From IMG/VR virus record IMGVR_UViG_3300042387_000948, positions 124,001-188,000 of that record: DNA of 64,000 nucleotides; one strand, 5' to 3'. A program made the position numbers and the translations under genes. The notes beneath the pieces are model-generated. The model was given only the letters and a program-made list of their open reading frames with translations, was not told the origin of the DNA and did not search any database. Below are positions 1,000 through 35,811 of this stretch, one piece after another. Position 1 is the first letter of the stretch. Each line of letters starts with the position of its first letter.

Positions 1000-1031
1000 C
1001 AAAGATACGAATAATTTTTCAATTATCCAAA
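1000..1031 (-). promoter_or_regulatory. Bacteroidota-type primary sigma promoter
   Basis: Minus strand TTTGG-N19-TATCTTTG, 19 nt upstream of the GT2 ATG. Confidence 0.8.
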
Positions 1032-5940: not shown

Positions 5941-6144
5941 TTAAAATTGTGAACCGCTTATTTGAAGTTGTAAGTACTCATTCATTTCGTTTCTGAAATC
6001 ATCATCTCTAACATATCTTTCCACAGTTCTATTAACTAGCTTTTGTAGTGTTACATCGGAATCAAATGATACTTTTTTGAAACTTGAATACACATCTTTC
6101 AAAATTTTTACGGTTGTCAGTTTTGTGTTTTCATTTTGACCCAT
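5941..6144 (-). CDS. Small DNA-binding protein (ribbon-helix-helix-like)
   Basis: 67 aa, beta strand (LTTVKI) followed by two helices. Confidence 0.5.
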   Translation of the reverse strand: MGQNENTKLTTVKILKDVYSSFKKVSFDSDVTLQKLVNRTVERYVRDDDFRNEMNEYLQLQISGSQF

Positions 6145-6210
6145 AGTTATTTCGTTTTATATATTTGTATATATAAATATAAACATTTTAAAAAAACGAA
6201 AAATTATGAA

Positions 6211-7077
6211 TTAAGGTTTACCATCACACAATCCCCTAACAGAGAACTCACACCATTTGCAATTCTTTTTAGCGTTGCCTGGTACTTTTGGATATGGGAT
6301 ATCTCTAAAGTTACCCTCATCATCAAACACAATATCAATGAAACTCATAAACTCATCATATACTTTGTTTACCGATGGAGAACCATTTGGTGGAATATGC
6401 TTTGAAATACGAGGAACAGGATATGGTGAATCTTCAGGAAGTTTCCTACGCATGATTTGGAACTCTACTCTGATTTTTGTTAATGGTATATCAAACAATT
6501 CAGAATAGTATTTCTTATATAATAGAATTTGTGAGTTCTTTAATCTATCTTCCTTTTGATACTTATTCCACCCCATTGTAGAGGTCTTTAAGTCAATGAT
6601 TATGATTGCGTTCTCCGCAATATCTTTTAATACAATATCAATATAACCAATGAAATGTACACCCTTCTTAATCTCTTTATTTAATGGAATCTCAATACCA
6701 ACCAATTCATATCCTGATTTAGAATAAAACTTTCCGATATGTTTCATAAACCATTCTAAAATACGTCTACCATCACCAAAAAACTCTTCTAACTCATCCT
6801 GCGAACAAGGTGTACCCTCACTCATCTTCTCTACCTCTACTTTGTAGTTTTCTCTCATTCTCTCCAATAAGAGTTTATCCACATTGATTTCATCTGCTTG
6901 CTTTTTAGAAACACCATACATAACCGAAAGGTAGTGTTGGATTGTTTCGTGCATAGCCGAACCAAAGATTGTGTGGATGTTAGATGAACTCTCCCCTAAC
7001 TTGTCTATGTAATTCAATTTGTATTGTTGTGGGCAAGAACTCCACATACCATATTGAGAAAAACTAACTCTAGCCAT
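6211..7077 (-). CDS. PD-(D/E)XK nuclease, RecB/Cas4-like
   Basis: SFSQY...CP, FGSAMHE, GYIDIV...IIDLKT, QILLY and C-terminal CKWCEF..C. Confidence 0.85.
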   Translation of the reverse strand: MARVSFSQYGMWSSCPQQYKLNYIDKLGESSSNIHTIFGSAMHETIQHYLSVMYGVSKKQADEINVDKLLLERMRENYKVEVEKMSEGTPCSQDELEEFFGDGRRILEWFMKHIGKFYSKSGYELVGIEIPLNKEIKKGVHFIGYIDIVLKDIAENAIIIIDLKTSTMGWNKYQKEDRLKNSQILLYKKYYSELFDIPLTKIRVEFQIMRRKLPEDSPYPVPRISKHIPPNGSPSVNKVYDEFMSFIDIVFDDEGNFRDIPYPKVPGNAKKNCKWCEFSVRGLCDGKP

Positions 7078-18582: not shown

Positions 18583-18614
18583 CAAAGTTACAAAATTAAT
18601 TTGATATTTCCAAA
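18583..18614 (-). promoter_or_regulatory. Bacteroidota-type promoter
   Basis: TTTGG-N19-TAACTTTG, overlapping the 3' end of Mom copy B. Confidence 0.75.
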
Positions 18615-27338: not shown

Positions 27339-27450
27339 CAAAGATACGAAGAATATTTGATAATACCAAATGTTTTTTTAAACTTTTTTTTATGCAGATA
27401 TTTTTCATATAATTGTAACAAAGATACTAATAATTTGTTACAAATCCAAA
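27339..27450 (-). promoter_or_regulatory. Tandem Bacteroidota-type promoters driving the SSB-RecA-helicase operon
   Basis: Two TTTGG-N19-TATCTTTG sites, at 27339-27370 and 27419-27450. Confidence 0.85.
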
Positions 27451-33689: not shown

Positions 33690-34976
33690 CTACACTTTTC
33701 CATAATCCAAACCCCAACTTGCTTTGATTGGAAACCCACCCTCTTCAATGATTTCTTTCAAATCCTTAATCTTATTCTTATCCACATTCGTAGGAACATC
33801 AAATAGAAACGAGTCATAAGTATATAAACTAAATCCGATTCCACTATTTCTAATGTAATCTAATATCTTTTTCATCTTATCAATGTTCATTTCAGTCTCT
33901 AAGGCTTGTAGAAGATAGTTAAACACCTTTTGTGGATTTGAACCCTCTATCCAACTTAGGGGTATTCTACGATATTTGGTTTGTAGGTATCCGTTTTGTT
34001 GTGTTTCAATCCATAATCCATCTATGTAATCAGCTACTGCGTTTAGATATGGAATTTGACGGAATGTATCATCGATTCCCCCATATAGTAATTGGAATGT
34101 AATACCCTTACCCTCATTTACATCACATCCATATTGTTCGGCTAACCACTCATGCACATTACCATCCGGCATATCAAACTTAATCAACTTACCAATAAGA
34201 CGGGGGTGGTATGCATTATAATCCATTTGTAGGAATATCCCATCGGAAACGAAACACTCCCTACTACCATCCGATTTATTGAGAGCGGCATAGTTCACAC
34301 CACCATGTCGATTTGAAGGTCTACCCGTTACCGTAAATGGATTGTATTCCGTAAACACTTTACTATCATCTGTCAAATGTCTAATAGCTTGATTCCATCT
34401 ATCAGTAAATTTTTTCCTATCGACCCGAATCCCATATCCCTCCATTTCTGAAAGTGTGGGTATGAATGTTTGGTTATACCATCGATATGTGTTAGAATCT
34501 GAATTATTGGAATAGTATTTAATGAATTGTGGTTCTATTACTTCCACAATCTTCATTAAAGGAATGGATTGAATTAAGTCATCTCTATACCCTTTATGAG
34601 TTAGCGTTGATAATAAAGGATTTAAAGGTGCCTCATAATCAATAACCTCACCTGTCCTTACAAAGTATTCCGAATCTACATCATATAGATTTACCGAAAC
34701 ATAAAGAGAGTGTAATATTTTTTTCTTTTGGAATACCCACTTCTTACCATTGGTATTTAGTATCGATTTAACGTCCGATACTTTGATTGTAAGAGCATCT
34801 GCGTGTTGAATTGGTAAAACATACAACTCATCCAAACATCGTACCAGTATGAGAGAAAGATTAGTATGAAGAGGATGCTTTGAGTTATCAACCCATAGTG
34901 GATACCATATAGATACTTCGGTTTCCAGCTTATCTTTCAACCAATTTACTTCCTCTATGGATTCTATAACTTTCAT
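33690..34976 (-). CDS. Family A DNA polymerase-like protein
   Basis: TGRPS, motif A QMDYNAYHPRL, motif B KGITFQLLYG, motif C YTYDS. Start placed at ATG 34976 because the track's extra 9 codons overlap a promoter. Confidence 0.8.
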   Translation of the reverse strand: MKVIESIEEVNWLKDKLETEVSIWYPLWVDNSKHPLHTNLSLILVRCLDELYVLPIQHADALTIKVSDVKSILNTNGKKWVFQKKKILHSLYVSVNLYDVDSEYFVRTGEVIDYEAPLNPLLSTLTHKGYRDDLIQSIPLMKIVEVIEPQFIKYYSNNSDSNTYRWYNQTFIPTLSEMEGYGIRVDRKKFTDRWNQAIRHLTDDSKVFTEYNPFTVTGRPSNRHGGVNYAALNKSDGSRECFVSDGIFLQMDYNAYHPRLIGKLIKFDMPDGNVHEWLAEQYGCDVNEGKGITFQLLYGGIDDTFRQIPYLNAVADYIDGLWIETQQNGYLQTKYRRIPLSWIEGSNPQKVFNYLLQALETEMNIDKMKKILDYIRNSGIGFSLYTYDSFLFDVPTNVDKNKIKDLKEIIEEGGFPIKASWGLDYGKV

Positions 34977-34980
34977 TTTA

Positions 34981-35012
34981 CAAAGATACAAAAAAAATCC
35001 CACAATTCCAAA
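34981..35012 (-). promoter_or_regulatory. Bacteroidota-type promoter for the polA-like gene
   Basis: TTTGG-N19-TATCTTTG, 4 nt before the ATG. Confidence 0.8.
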
Positions 35013-35026
35013 TGGAAAAGTGGGAG
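34990..35026 (-). terminator. tmRNA terminator
   Basis: TCCCAC...TTCCA/TGGAA...GTGGGA followed by a T-run, directly after the CCA end. Confidence 0.7.
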
Positions 35027-35406
35027 TGGTGGAGATGGCGGGATTCGAACCCGCGTCCAGATAAGTTTCTAATGTAAATCGTTCACAAGTTTAGGATAGT
35101 GTTTTATCTTACTAACACTCCAAAAGAATTGGGGCCGAATGGTTAATTCAGCAGATTCCACCAATCCATTTTAAGTTTGGATAAACTTAAATGTTCACTT
35201 CTTTTTAAATCCCATGAGTGATACGGGAGCGATTAGGCAGCTACTGCGTAATCGAAAGACTCCATCCATGCCATAGCATCTCCGAAAGTCATTGTAGATA
35301 ATTCTACGTCTGCACTTATTGTTTGATAGGTCTTCAAAGGTTTCCATCTAACCTTACTTGCATCAATACAACCAGTCTTCATACCTGTCAAAAGCCGGTC
35401 ATCCCC
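35027..35406 (-). ncRNA. ssrA: tmRNA (one-piece, 380 nt)
   Basis: 5' GGGGATG pairs with 3' CATCTCC-ACCA, including G3.U; T arm GCGGGTTCGAATCCCGC; resume context AATAAGT-GCA; tag ORF 35313-35233 ADVELSTMTFGDAMAWMESFDYAVAA*. Confidence 0.95.
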
Positions 35407-35425: not shown

Positions 35426-35457
35426 CAAATATACGATAAATATTTGTAATTTCCAAA
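35426..35457 (-). promoter_or_regulatory. Bacteroidota-type promoter of tmRNA
   Basis: TTTGG-N19-TATATTTG, 19 nt before the mature 5' end. Confidence 0.8.
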
Positions 35458-35811
35458 TTAATACTTATAAAATTGTAAATAGTTTAAAAGATATATTAAT
35501 ATTCCCTTCATTTTGTGTGAGGCTAGTTTAACTGATTTAAAATTTGATTCTTTTATTTGTTCAATAGTTCCATTTAATCTCCAATCTAATGTAATAGTTG
35601 TGTAGAAGGAATTATTGTTTAAATTAGAATATGTATTTAAATTAATTTCATATATGACAGAATTTGTATCATTTGTTTTTTGAGCAAAATATCTAGTTAT
35701 GTACCCTCTCTTATAATCAGTTTCCGAAATTATAGGAATGTGTGTATTAATTTTTTTTAAATTATAATCATCTGGTAATTGTACTATTTTTTTATATCTA
35801 GTTATATCCAT
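35458..35811 (-). CDS. Hypothetical protein (baseplate operon)
   Basis: 117 aa; DYKRGYITRYF. Confidence 0.65.
   Translation of the reverse strand: MDITRYKKIVQLPDDYNLKKINTHIPIISETDYKRGYITRYFAQKTNDTNSVIYEINLNTYSNLNNNSFYTTITLDWRLNGTIEQIKESNFKSVKLASHKMKGILIYLLNYLQFYKY

What the first reader, a model, noticed from the sequence alone, without database searches (positions are those of the whole stretch)
35027..35406. Complete phage tmRNA encoding an unusually long 26-residue tag
Seen: intact Ala acceptor stem with encoded CCA, its own promoter and terminator, and tag ADVELSTMTFGDAMAWMESFDYAVAA*. Known: most bacterial tags are about 9-15 aa; Bacteroidota tags are typically short GENNYALAA-like; C-terminal AA is the ClpXP degron. 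The middle of this tag (FGDAMAWMESF) looks like an amphipathic helix, and no smpB is seen in the window. Inference: the extension may recruit a different protease or adaptor, or redirect tagged host versus phage proteins.
Basis: partly seen in the sequence, partly recalled or inferred. Interest (0 to 1): 0.7.

Follow-up and report, generated by a model that had tools for sequence, protein, structure and literature searches.

The report
Phage tmRNA with long conserved tag
A 207-kb lake-water phage carries its own expressed ribosome-rescue RNA (tmRNA) whose encoded protein tag is 26 amino acids, two to three times the usual length; the long tag is kept in a whole family of related phages, which points to a phage-specific use of protein tagging that nobody has tested.

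Summary
Window 35027-35406 (- strand) is a full-length one-piece tmRNA, called at the same coordinates by ARAGORN and Rfam (99.6 bits, E 1e-37). It has an invariant G3:U pair, an encoded CCA, a conserved Bacteroidota-type promoter and a hairpin plus U8 terminator. It sits among phage genes in a 207-kb virus record that also has 25 tRNAs.

The 26-codon tag frame is real:
- The resume codon GCA aligns with the Rfam resume column.
- U(-5) and A(-4) are conserved upstream of it.
- All 51 distinct homologues, from at least 116 IMG/VR contigs, carry the same frame at 23-26 codons.
- Length differences are whole codons only.
- In-frame pN/pS is 0.41 against 1.3-1.9 off-frame, and the N-terminal half alone also gives 0.41.

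Four freshwater metatranscriptomes hold contigs confined to the gene.

Seventy sampled Bacteroidota tmRNAs encode tags of 8-10 aa (68 of 70). The phage has no SmpB, ClpP, Lon or SspB, so it must use host factors. The "amphipathic helix" reading is not supported. What the extension does is untested.

Long tags are not unique to this family. Two unrelated phages have 31-aa tags, and Mollicutes have 27-aa tags. I rate this a new variant of a known kind, of moderate interest.

The parts
35027..35406 (-). tmRNA gene (380 nt, one-piece, CCA encoded)
   Evidence: ARAGORN. Rfam RF00023 at 99.6 bits, full length. 18 of 58 predicted pairs show compensatory changes across 35 homologues. Metatranscriptome contigs lie only inside 35029-35404.
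35400..35406 (-). 5' strand of the acceptor stem (GGGGAUG); G3 pairs with U at 35033 (the alanine identity pair)
   Evidence: Sequence. G3:U is invariant in 35 of 35 sequences. Pair 5 switches between A:U and G:C, with G:C in 13 sequences.
35233..35313 (-). mRNA-like domain: resume codon GCA (35313-35311), 26 sense codons, UAA stop (35235-35233). Tag ADVELSTMTFGDAMAWMESFDYAVAA
   Evidence: The resume codon aligns with the Rfam resume column at top posterior probability. The frame is conserved in 51 distinct homologues at 23-26 codons. pN/pS is 0.41 in frame against 1.28 and 1.88 off-frame.
35316..35320 (-). Invariant AAUAA, which places U at -5 and A at -4 of the resume codon
   Evidence: Invariant columns A87 A88 T89 A90 A91 in alignment A1. 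They correspond to U85/A86 before resume 90-GCA-92 in E. coli (PMC1168896).
35027..35062 (-). T-arm, 3' strand of the acceptor stem and ACCA end
   Evidence: Rfam alignment at top posterior probability. Three T-stem pairs covary.
35426..35457 (-). Promoter of the Bacteroidota -33/-7 type: TTTG-N20-TATATTTG, ending 19 nt before the mature 5' end
   Evidence: Conserved upstream of every homologue although the flanks diverge. The motif is enriched in the window, 14 against 3.7 expected.
34990..35025 (-). Intrinsic terminator: hairpin 35025-34998 plus U8 at 34997-34990
   Evidence: -16 kcal/mol, z -5.2, 0 of 200 shuffles fold as well. Relatives keep a hairpin plus U-run made of different sequence.
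34981..35012 (-). Second copy of the same promoter motif, overlapping the terminator. It probably drives the downstream DNA polymerase gene
   Evidence: Pattern match. Function is inferred.
35458..35811 (-). Syntenic upstream ORF (117 aa, unknown function). It is a neighbour only and is not shown to belong to the tmRNA system
   Evidence: Present upstream of the tmRNA in nearly all relatives at 44% mean identity. AF2 pLDDT 88; no PDB match, only uncharacterised AFDB clusters; not an SmpB fold.
33690..35003 (-). Downstream neighbour: family A DNA polymerase-like protein (437 aa ORF). It was used as the anchor to find related phages
   Evidence: PHROG 17, E 4e-13. 76 related IMG/VR loci.

Best explanation
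This is a working phage-encoded tmRNA.

Shown:
- It is transcribed from its own host-type promoter, ends at its own terminator, and accumulates as a discrete RNA in lakes.
- It keeps every sequence feature needed for alanine charging and for resuming translation.
- Its whole 26-codon frame is under selection as protein.

Inferred:
- It is processed and charged by host enzymes (RNase P, AlaRS).
- It is carried by host SmpB and EF-Tu into ribosomes stalled on broken mRNAs in the infected cell, probably a Bacteroidota cell. There it frees the ribosome and appends Ala plus ADVELSTMTFGDAMAWMESFDYAVAA to the unfinished protein.
- The C-terminal A-V-A-A acts as the usual hydrophobic C-terminal degron for host AAA+ proteases.
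- The conserved acidic, aromatic-rich segment upstream (E-L-S-T-[WM]-T-F-[ED]-D-x-M-x-[FW]) is a second recognition element. It would give phage-tagged proteins a different handling from host-tagged ones, for instance a different protease or adaptor. The long Lon-directed tags of Mollicutes are a precedent.
- The benefit to the phage is to keep ribosomes and amino acids available during takeover. This fits its 25 tRNA genes.
For: Gene identity and structure. G3:U is invariant and 18 pairs are compensatory.

Phage context. The record is 207 kb, CheckV 100%. Neighbours are a baseplate gene, a polymerase and an endolysin, and there are 25 tRNAs.

Own promoter and terminator.

Expression: four freshwater metatranscriptomes hold contigs only within 35029-35404. 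Three runs hold contigs with no mismatch, and nothing lies in 2.2 kb on either side.

Translation of the full frame:
- The resume codon aligns to the Rfam resume column.
- U-5/A-4 are invariant.
- There are 22 peptide variants of 23-26 aa, and indels are whole codons only.
- Variable columns by codon position are 11, 14 and 24.
- pN/pS is 0.41 in frame against 1.28 and 1.88 off-frame. Codons 1-12 give 0.41, codons 13-20 give 0.48 and the last six give 0.28.

The tag is distinct from the likely host phylum:
- 68 of 70 evenly drawn Bacteroidota tmRNAs encode 8-10 aa.
- 68 of those 70 tags end in LAA or MAA, and none ends in VAA.
- No species-representative genome has a tmRNA ending GADYAVAA.

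Dependence on the host: no SmpB, ClpP, Lon or SspB in the phage, and no SmpB in five relatives.

Host phylum:
- The TTTG/TAnnTTTG promoters.
- No Shine-Dalgarno signal: 5 of 170 ORFs against 17 in a control window.
- The nearest cultured relatives include Flavobacterium phages.

Precedent for a long tag with internal protease determinants: Mollicutes and Lon (PMC9382460; 27-aa sequence).
Against: - There is no direct evidence of charging, tagging or degradation.
- The host is inferred, not identified, so its real tag and proteases are unknown.
- Part of the conservation in the tag region is at RNA level. The third positions of Ala23 and Ala25 covary to keep a small hairpin, so synonymous sites are not free and pN/pS is only a rough guide. 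The pairwise counts are also not phylogenetically independent.
- No phage-encoded protease or adaptor was found that could read the extension.
- The internal segment has no amphipathic-helix signal.
- A role for the extension in proteolysis rests on analogy only.
Confidence: 0.5

Rival explanations
1. The tmRNA serves only to rescue ribosomes. The tag must exist and must end in a degron, but its extra length has no function of its own. It would be inherited from a donor lineage with long tags, or held by RNA-level constraints on the mRNA-like domain.
For: - tmRNAs with mRNA-like domains of 48-126 nt exist (PMC1168896), so 81 nt is within the known range.
- A small hairpin with covarying synonymous positions lies inside the frame.
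- Other phage tmRNAs also carry long tags with unrelated sequences.
Against: - Internal residues are conserved as amino acids with synonymous codon turnover: S6 TCT/TCA, T9 ACT/ACG/ACC, F10 TTC/TTT, D12 GAT/GAC, G18 with four codons.
- pN/pS of the internal segments is 0.41-0.48.
- No sampled bacterial genome has a similar tag that could be the donor.
Confidence: 0.25
2. The tag is not a degradation signal for quality control. It is a tool against the host. Proteins bearing the long acidic, aromatic tail would occupy or mislead host proteases or chaperones, or would mark host nascent chains for rapid recycling into amino acids. Phage proteins would be protected, or a protease-dependent defence would be blunted.
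For: - The tag differs from sampled host-phylum tags along its whole length, including the third-last residue, which is V/Y/I here against L/M in the sample.
- It is conserved across the family.
- Amino-acid recycling and upkeep of hijacked machinery have been proposed for other phage tmRNAs (PMC9004378).
Against: No evidence of any kind beyond conservation. The ending A-V-A-A resembles ordinary degrons.
Confidence: 0.12
3. The RNA acts mainly as a decoy that soaks up host SmpB and blocks host trans-translation. This has been suggested for the tRNA-like-domain-only molecule of mycobacteriophage DS6A.
For: A precedent is described in PMC4131195 and PMC11915505. The phage encodes no SmpB of its own.
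Against: A decoy has no need for a reading frame. Here the frame, its stop codon and the U-5/A-4 resume context are conserved and under purifying selection.
Confidence: 0.05
4. It is a passenger: host tmRNA DNA picked up at an integration site, or host DNA on a misassembled contig, with no role in the phage.
For: tmRNA genes are common prophage integration sites, and fragments of them occur in phages (PMC9004378).
Against: - The gene is full length, not a 3' fragment.
- It lies 159 kb into a 207-kb phage record, between structural and replication genes.
- It holds the same place in at least 76 related phage contigs.
- It has a phage-type recurrent promoter.
- It is expressed.
- Its tag matches no sampled bacterial tmRNA.
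Confidence: 0.01
5. The true resume codon lies further downstream, for example at the in-frame GCU of codon 13, giving a normal-length tag.
For: In-frame Ala codons exist inside the frame.
Against: - Codons 1-12 carry the same coding signature as the rest: pN/pS 0.41 against 1.96 and 2.83 off-frame, and third-position variation in 11 of 12 columns.
- Indels near the start are whole codons.
- The Rfam alignment and the U-5/A-4 context both point to nt 94.
Confidence: 0.04

Closest known systems
Bacterial one-piece tmRNA (ssrA, Rfam RF00023)
   Same: - tRNA-like domain with a G3:U pair, a T-arm and CCA.
- Resume codon after the first pseudoknot, with U-5/A-4 upstream.
- A frame that ends in hydrophobic ...A-x-A-A, followed by UAA.
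- About 380 nt long.
   Different: - It is encoded by a virulent-looking jumbo phage with no SmpB.
- The tag is 23-26 aa, against a most frequent length of 10 aa (PMC11915505) and 8-10 aa in sampled Bacteroidota.
- The tag sequence is unrelated to the GENNYALAA, ANDYSYAMAA and DNNYSYRLAA types found in that phylum.
Phage-encoded tmRNAs: mycobacteriophage Bxz1 group, Bacillus phage G, Streptomyces phages, huge phages, OM43 phage Melnitz
   Same: A complete tmRNA in a large phage that is also rich in tRNAs. Its function in infection is unknown. It is uncommon: 402 of 18,146 phage genomes, 2.3% (PMC9004378).
   Different: - Annotated tags in cultured phages seen here are 11-13 aa (phage G AKLNITNNELQVA, PMC12484599).
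- This family has no sequence relative among 50,697 cultured phage records beyond the T-arm.
- Its tag is conserved family-wide at 23-26 aa.
- Two unrelated uncultured phages do have 31-aa tags (L325, L348).
Long ssrA tags of Mollicutes (Mesoplasma florum, 27 aa, read by Lon)
   Same: - Similar total length: Ala plus 26 residues makes 27.
- Conserved internal residues in addition to the C-terminal motif.
- An internal T-F and a C-terminal Y-A-x-A.
- The precedent shows that a long tag can carry determinants for a protease other than ClpXP.
   Different: - No sequence homology.
- It ends in AVAA, not YAFA.
- The likely host phylum has ClpP, unlike Mollicutes (Bacteroides control).
- Recognition by Lon is not tested.
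Caulobacter / alphaproteobacterial tag ...FAVAA with the SspB-alpha adaptor (from my own knowledge, not checked with tools)
   Same: Same last four residues (AVAA). The design is bipartite: an adaptor-binding part upstream of the ClpX-binding end.
   Different: That tag is 14 aa on a two-piece tmRNA. No SspB is found in the phage, and SspB was absent from the Bacteroides control genome in that search.
tRNA-like-domain-only tmRNA mimic of mycobacteriophage DS6A
   Same: Phage-borne, and depends on host SmpB.
   Different: DS6A lacks the reading frame. This RNA has a conserved, selected frame.

Membership tests
tmRNA (RF00023) | Covariance-model match above the curated gathering score over the full model | tested here: met
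   99.6 bits against 47, model 1-374/374, E 1e-37. ARAGORN gives the same coordinates.
tmRNA (RF00023) | tRNA-like domain: 7-bp acceptor stem with G3:U70, T-arm, and a 3' CCA that is either encoded or added | tested here: met
   G3:U is invariant in 35 of 35 sequences. Acceptor pair 5 and three T-stem pairs covary. CCA is encoded here and in about half of the homologues.
tmRNA (RF00023) | mRNA-like domain: resume codon with conserved upstream context, a short frame ending in a hydrophobic C-terminus, and an in-frame stop | tested here: met
   GCA at nt 94 with U-5/A-4. Ends ...YAVAA-UAA. The frame is conserved and under purifying selection.
tmRNA (RF00023) | Pseudoknot domain (PK1-PK4) | tested here: inconclusive
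   The Rfam alignment spans the region at moderate posterior probability. RNAalifold finds covarying hairpins at the expected places but cannot model pseudoknots. I did not test the second strands of the pseudoknots.
tmRNA (RF00023) | Made as a stable, discrete RNA | tested here: met
   Contigs from four metatranscriptome runs lie only within the gene. Flanks of 2.2 kb on each side are empty.
tmRNA (RF00023) | Works with SmpB, is charged with Ala, and tags proteins on stalled ribosomes | not testable with these tools
   No SmpB in the phage or in five relatives. Use of host SmpB is inferred.
Mollicutes-type Lon-directed long ssrA tag | Tag of about 27 residues | tested here: met
   26 encoded residues plus the charged Ala. 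The mf-ssrA sequence of 27 residues is confirmed in PMC9097571.
Mollicutes-type Lon-directed long ssrA tag | C-terminal NYAFA-type motif, in an organism lacking ClpXP | tested here: not met
   The tag ends DYAVAA. A Bacteroidota control genome has ClpP. There is no sequence similarity beyond T-F and Y-A-x-A.
Mollicutes-type Lon-directed long ssrA tag | Degradation by Lon through internal tag residues | not testable with these tools
   Analogy only.
Phage att-site fragment of a host tmRNA gene | Only the 3' part of the gene is present, next to an integrase | tested here: not met
   The gene is full length. Neighbours are structural and replication genes.
TLD-only tmRNA mimic (DS6A type) | Lacks a tag reading frame | tested here: not met
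   A conserved 23-26-codon frame is present.

The most novel reading that the evidence does not exclude
Extended, lineage-specific tags are a recurrent and independently evolved property of phage-encoded tmRNAs. This family has 23-26 aa, and unrelated phages have 22-31 aa. The extensions would give proteins tagged by the phage tmRNA a different fate from those tagged by the host tmRNA: another protease or adaptor, titration of host proteases, or fast recycling of host nascent chains. The phage would then run a private tagging channel on host ribosomes.
Probability: 0.2. Interest if true: 0.7.

Novelty: new variant of a known kind. Interest (0 to 1): 0.5.

Why it matters
Phage-encoded tmRNAs have been catalogued for twenty years, yet the literature I could read reports no tested function for any of them. 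This family offers a practical handle on that question. Its tag is long, conserved and unlike any tag sampled from the likely host phylum. Peptides ending in it would therefore be unambiguous in proteomes or lake metaproteomes, and would show which proteins a phage tmRNA tags during infection.

The selection on the internal residues says that something reads more than the last few amino acids. It would also supply an orthogonal degron for Bacteroidota genetics. The family is common in freshwater lakes (at least 116 IMG/VR contigs, many metagenome runs) and is transcribed there.

Tried and rejected
1. Hidden SmpB. The syntenic 117-aa ORF just upstream (35458-35811) was aligned and folded (pLDDT 88) and then searched. 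It has no PDB match and hits only uncharacterised AFDB clusters, so it is not an SmpB fold.
2. The same ORF as a tag-binding adaptor. Complex prediction gave 'no answer' (score 0.00). This is evidence neither for nor against.
3. Phage-encoded protease or adaptor. There is no ClpP, Lon_C or SspB. The single AAA_2 hit (G000 about 90.1-91.3 kb, outside the window) is a MoxR/AAA_5/CbbQ-like ATPase, not ClpX.
4. Amphipathic helix. The hydrophobic moment is no higher than in shuffles.
5. Tag-like peptides, or ORFs ending in the same degron, elsewhere in the phage genome: none apart from the tmRNA itself.
6. Bacterial donor of the tag. The pattern for G-A-D-Y-A-V-A-A-stop, searched in 185,579 species genomes, gave two chance hits, neither in a tmRNA.
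7. Cultured relatives. blastn against 50,697 phage records matched only the universal T-arm.
8. ARAGORN's short tags (VNKPEHYLSAP and similar) in about a dozen homologues are miscalls. The alignment shows the same long frame at the usual place.
9. Generic sigma-70 and terminator scan: uninformative.
10. Host from an auxiliary gene. The nearest ESM Atlas clusters to the phage GTP cyclohydrolase I are viral, so this gave no host clue.
11. Supplement of the tmRNA database paper: no tag strings are held.

Full report
**What is there**

ARAGORN finds exactly one RNA gene in the window. It is a tmRNA at 35027-35406 on the - strand with the tag ADVELSTMTFGDAMAWMESFDYAVAA. Rfam's tmRNA model matches the same coordinates end to end (99.6 bits, gathering score 47, E 1e-37).

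The sequence shows:
- the acceptor stem GGGGAUG/CAUCUCC with the G3:U pair that marks alanine acceptors;
- a standard T-arm and an encoded ACCA;
- GCA at nt 94-96 (window 35313-35311), aligned to the resume-codon column of the model at the highest posterior probability;
- UAA at 35235-35233.

**Context**

The window is bases 124001-188000 of a 207,029-bp virus record that CheckV rates complete. The record has 33.9% G+C and an array of 25 tRNA genes at 70.7-76.4 kb.

The tmRNA lies between a block with a baseplate wedge protein and large unknown proteins upstream, and a family A DNA polymerase-like gene, a nuclease and an endolysin downstream. All are on the same strand. It is therefore inside a phage genome, not at a prophage-host junction.

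**Relatives**

The polymerase-like neighbour retrieved 76 IMG/VR loci at 59-100% identity. A family-specific tmRNA motif retrieved 116 stretches. Together they give 51 distinct tmRNA sequences.

Cultured phages share only the universal T-arm. The nearest cultured relatives of the polymerase include Flavobacterium phages at 26% identity and a Microcystis phage at 28%.

**Structure**

An alignment of 35 distinct sequences (A1) was folded with RNAalifold and gave 58 pairs, of which 18 show compensatory double changes. Examples:
- acceptor pair 5, A:U to G:C in 13 sequences;
- helix 2;
- the PK1 hairpin;
- three T-stem pairs.

G3:U is invariant. I did not test the pseudoknot second strands.

**Promoter and terminator**

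The sigma-70 scan was no better than chance, and the terminator scan found nothing. The signals are nevertheless there.

Every homologue has TTTG, about 20 nt, then TAtaTTTG/A just upstream. This is the -33/-7 promoter type of Bacteroidota, named from my own knowledge of that phylum's promoters. In the window the motif occurs 14 times against 3.7 expected, and none of 100 shuffles reached 14. Several copies share an extended consensus, so this is a recurrent phage promoter.

After the CCA comes a hairpin of -16 kcal/mol (z -5.2) followed by U8. Relatives keep a hairpin plus U-run built from different sequence.

**Expression**

The gene's 31-mers occur in many lake metagenomes and in six freshwater metatranscriptome runs. 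I laid four RNA runs on 5 kb around the gene. Apart from two short stray matches of 30-32 nt in X18, both with mismatches, all laid contigs fall within 35029-35404, and the adjacent 2.2 kb on each side is empty.

Three runs hold contigs of 151-262 nt with no mismatch. A fourth holds a 332-nt contig with five differences, which is a relative. DNA carry-over would have covered the flanks. The contig ends stop 2-9 nt short of the predicted 5' end, and the nearest contig starts 12 nt from the predicted 3' end.

**Is the 26-residue tag real?**

Four independent lines say yes.
1. The Rfam alignment places the resume codon at nt 94.
2. The invariant AAUAA puts U at -5 and A at -4 of the proposed resume codon in every family member but one (L211 has C at -5). 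This holds whether that codon is GCA or GAC/GAU. These are the positions of U85 and A86 before resume 90-GCA-92 in E. coli (PMC1168896). The same paper records Asp resume codons in three bacterial tmRNAs.
3. All 51 distinct sequences carry the same frame at 23-26 codons in 22 peptide variants, and all length differences are whole codons. About a dozen ARAGORN calls of short tags at nt ~205 are miscalls.
4. The frame evolves as protein.
   - Variable columns by codon position are 11, 14 and 24.
   - Pooled pairwise pN/pS is 0.41 in frame against 1.28 and 1.88 in the other frames.
   - Split by segment: codons 1-12 give 0.41 (off-frame 1.96 and 2.83), codons 13-20 give 0.48, and the last six give 0.28.

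A resume codon further downstream is therefore very unlikely.

Three caveats apply. The sequence pairs are not independent. The region is short. One small hairpin in the 3' part of the frame holds two Ala third positions in covariation (GCA..GCU against GCU..GCA), so some synonymous sites are constrained by RNA structure.

**What the tag looks like**

The family consensus is (A)D-V-E-L-S-T-[WM]-T-F-[ED]-D-x-M-[AS]-[FW]-[VMI]-G-A-(x)-D-Y-A-V-A-A.
- It has no Lys or Arg, and the three variants I computed each have net charge -5.
- Five to seven residues are aromatic or methionine.
- It ends in A-[VYI]-A-A.

**Comparison with bacteria**

A pattern for ...GADYAVAA-stop in one genome from each of 185,579 species gave two hits, about the number expected by chance, and neither lies in a tmRNA.

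I then took 151 Bacteroidota genomes drawn evenly and read 70 tmRNAs with ARAGORN. 68 have tags of 8-10 aa, one has 15 and one has 6. Tags in 68 of the 70 end in LAA or MAA, and none ends in VAA.

The tmRNA database paper gives 10 aa as the most frequent length (PMC11915505). The phage tag is thus about 2.5 times the length of tags in the likely host phylum and differs from them along its whole length.

It is not outside the range of all tmRNAs. mRNA-like domains of 48-126 nt are known, and the Mesoplasma florum tag has 27 residues.

**Host**

The host is not identified. Bacteroidota is the best guess, for three reasons:
- the promoter type;
- the absence of Shine-Dalgarno signals (5 of 170 ORFs against 17 in a control window, with A-rich, G-poor leaders);
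- Flavobacterium phages among the nearest cultured relatives.

**Partners**

The phage has no SmpB, and neither do five relatives, two of which are at least 97% complete. It has no ClpP, Lon or SspB. Its one AAA_2 hit is a MoxR/CbbQ-like ATPase.

The conserved 117-aa ORF next to the tmRNA has a confident predicted fold with no known relative, and it is not SmpB-like. A co-folding test of this ORF with the tag gave no answer.

Charging, delivery and any proteolysis must therefore use host factors. This is inferred, not shown.

**Mechanism**

Shown: a discrete, expressed, structurally conserved tmRNA with a translated-type frame.

Inferred from the established trans-translation pathway:
- host RNase P, AlaRS, SmpB and EF-Tu load the RNA onto stalled ribosomes;
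- Ala plus 26 residues are added, and the ribosome is released at UAA;
- the hydrophobic A-V-A-A end targets the product to AAA+ proteases.

The selection on the internal residues means that something reads more than the C-terminus. The most economical idea is a second recognition element for a protease or adaptor. Mollicutes provide the precedent: their long tag is read by Lon (PMC9382460).

I put 0.5 on this full model. Within it:
- about 0.9 that this is a functional tmRNA encoding the full-length tag;
- about 0.35 that the extension is a proteolysis determinant.

The rivals are a neutral or RNA-constrained extension, an anti-host use of the tag, an SmpB decoy, a passenger gene and a downstream resume codon. 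They are scored in their own section. The last three are contradicted by the data.

**How new is it?**

Phage tmRNAs are known. They have been reported in huge phages (PMC7162821), in the Bxz1 group and phage G (PMC4131195), and in 2.3% of phage genomes (PMC9004378). I found no paper on this family or on long tags in phages.

The length is not unique among phages. I took a sample of 79 other IMG/VR loci with a generic tmRNA 3' end. ARAGORN called 24 tmRNAs there, and six distinct tags were 22-31 aa. Two 31-aa tags were confirmed by Rfam alignment. One lies next to a terminase and a tail sheath (L325) and the other next to UvsX (L348).

This finding is therefore one well-supported case of what may be a wider habit of phage tmRNAs. 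I rate it a new variant of a known kind, with interest 0.5.

Noticed in passing
L325:6747-7152 (-), L348:2034-2438 (-), also L349, L300, L351: Unrelated IMG/VR tmRNAs also encode long tags. L325 and L348 have 31 aa, with the resume codon confirmed by Rfam, and sit next to terminase/tail sheath and UvsX respectively. L349 has 29 aa, L300 25 aa and L351 22 aa. Six of 24 distinct tags in a small sample are 22 aa or more. Long tags may be a general habit of phage tmRNAs.
   Followed up: partly
L351:1688-4839 (+), just upstream of the tmRNA at 6053-6451: A tmRNA with a 22-aa tag lies beside a 688-aa ATP-dependent protease (phrog_4871, E 7e-241) and a peptidase. This could be a host flank of a prophage, or it could be a phage-borne protease paired with a tmRNA.
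   Followed up: no
L045:4875-5753 (+); also L020, L038, L046, L052, L054, L075, L076 between the tmRNA and the polymerase gene: The slot downstream of the tmRNA is a variable insertion site. One relative carries a RimK-like ATP-grasp enzyme there (E 5e-49). RimK adds glutamates to a protein C-terminus. Other relatives carry ORFs of 82-140 aa with no Pfam match. There is no RimK in the window's own genome.
   Followed up: partly
window 1000-1031, 18583-18614, 27339-27370, 27419-27450, 34981-35012, 35426-35457 (all - strand): A recurrent promoter-like element, TTTGG(A/T)A...N...(T/C)GTAT(A/C)TTTG, with about 20-nt spacing (Bacteroidota -33/-7 type). There are 37 matches to the loose motif genome-wide. 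Together with the lack of Shine-Dalgarno signals it points to a Bacteroidota host.
   Followed up: partly
window 35458-35811 (-): A conserved 117-aa protein upstream of the tmRNA in almost all relatives. Invariant residues are Y33, G36, R40, F42, Q44, N47, D48, E55, W77, G81, N90, L108, Q113 and F114. The AF2 model is confident (pLDDT 88), has no PDB match and matches only the C-terminal parts of uncharacterised 198-272-aa proteins in AFDB. Function unknown, possibly structural.
   Followed up: partly
G000:C1:70704-76445 (outside the window): An array of 25 tRNA genes on one strand. It includes two tRNA-His, two tRNA-Gly(tcc), and one odd call with a two-base anticodon ('tRNA-???').
   Followed up: no
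G000:C1 about 89.1-91.3 kb (L163; outside the window): A GTP cyclohydrolase I gene (E 1e-52) lies next to a MoxR/AAA_5/CbbQ-like ATPase. This could belong to a 7-deazaguanine or folate-type nucleotide pathway.
   Followed up: no
alignment A1; L018/L024 against L042/L049; L029 and L045: The tmRNA bodies look mosaic. The same PK2-region variant is combined with different tags and different PK1 variants. Two sequences carry an insert of about 45 nt in the pseudoknot domain (433 and 422 nt). CCA is encoded in only about half of the family. This suggests recombination among co-circulating phages.
   Followed up: no
window 35236-35250 (-), codons 22-26 of the tag: The third positions of the Ala23 and Ala25 codons covary (GCA GUA GCU against GCU GUA GCA, 12 of 35 sequences). 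This preserves a 3-bp hairpin just before the stop codon. It is an RNA-level constraint inside the coding frame, probably the family's helix 5.
   Followed up: partly
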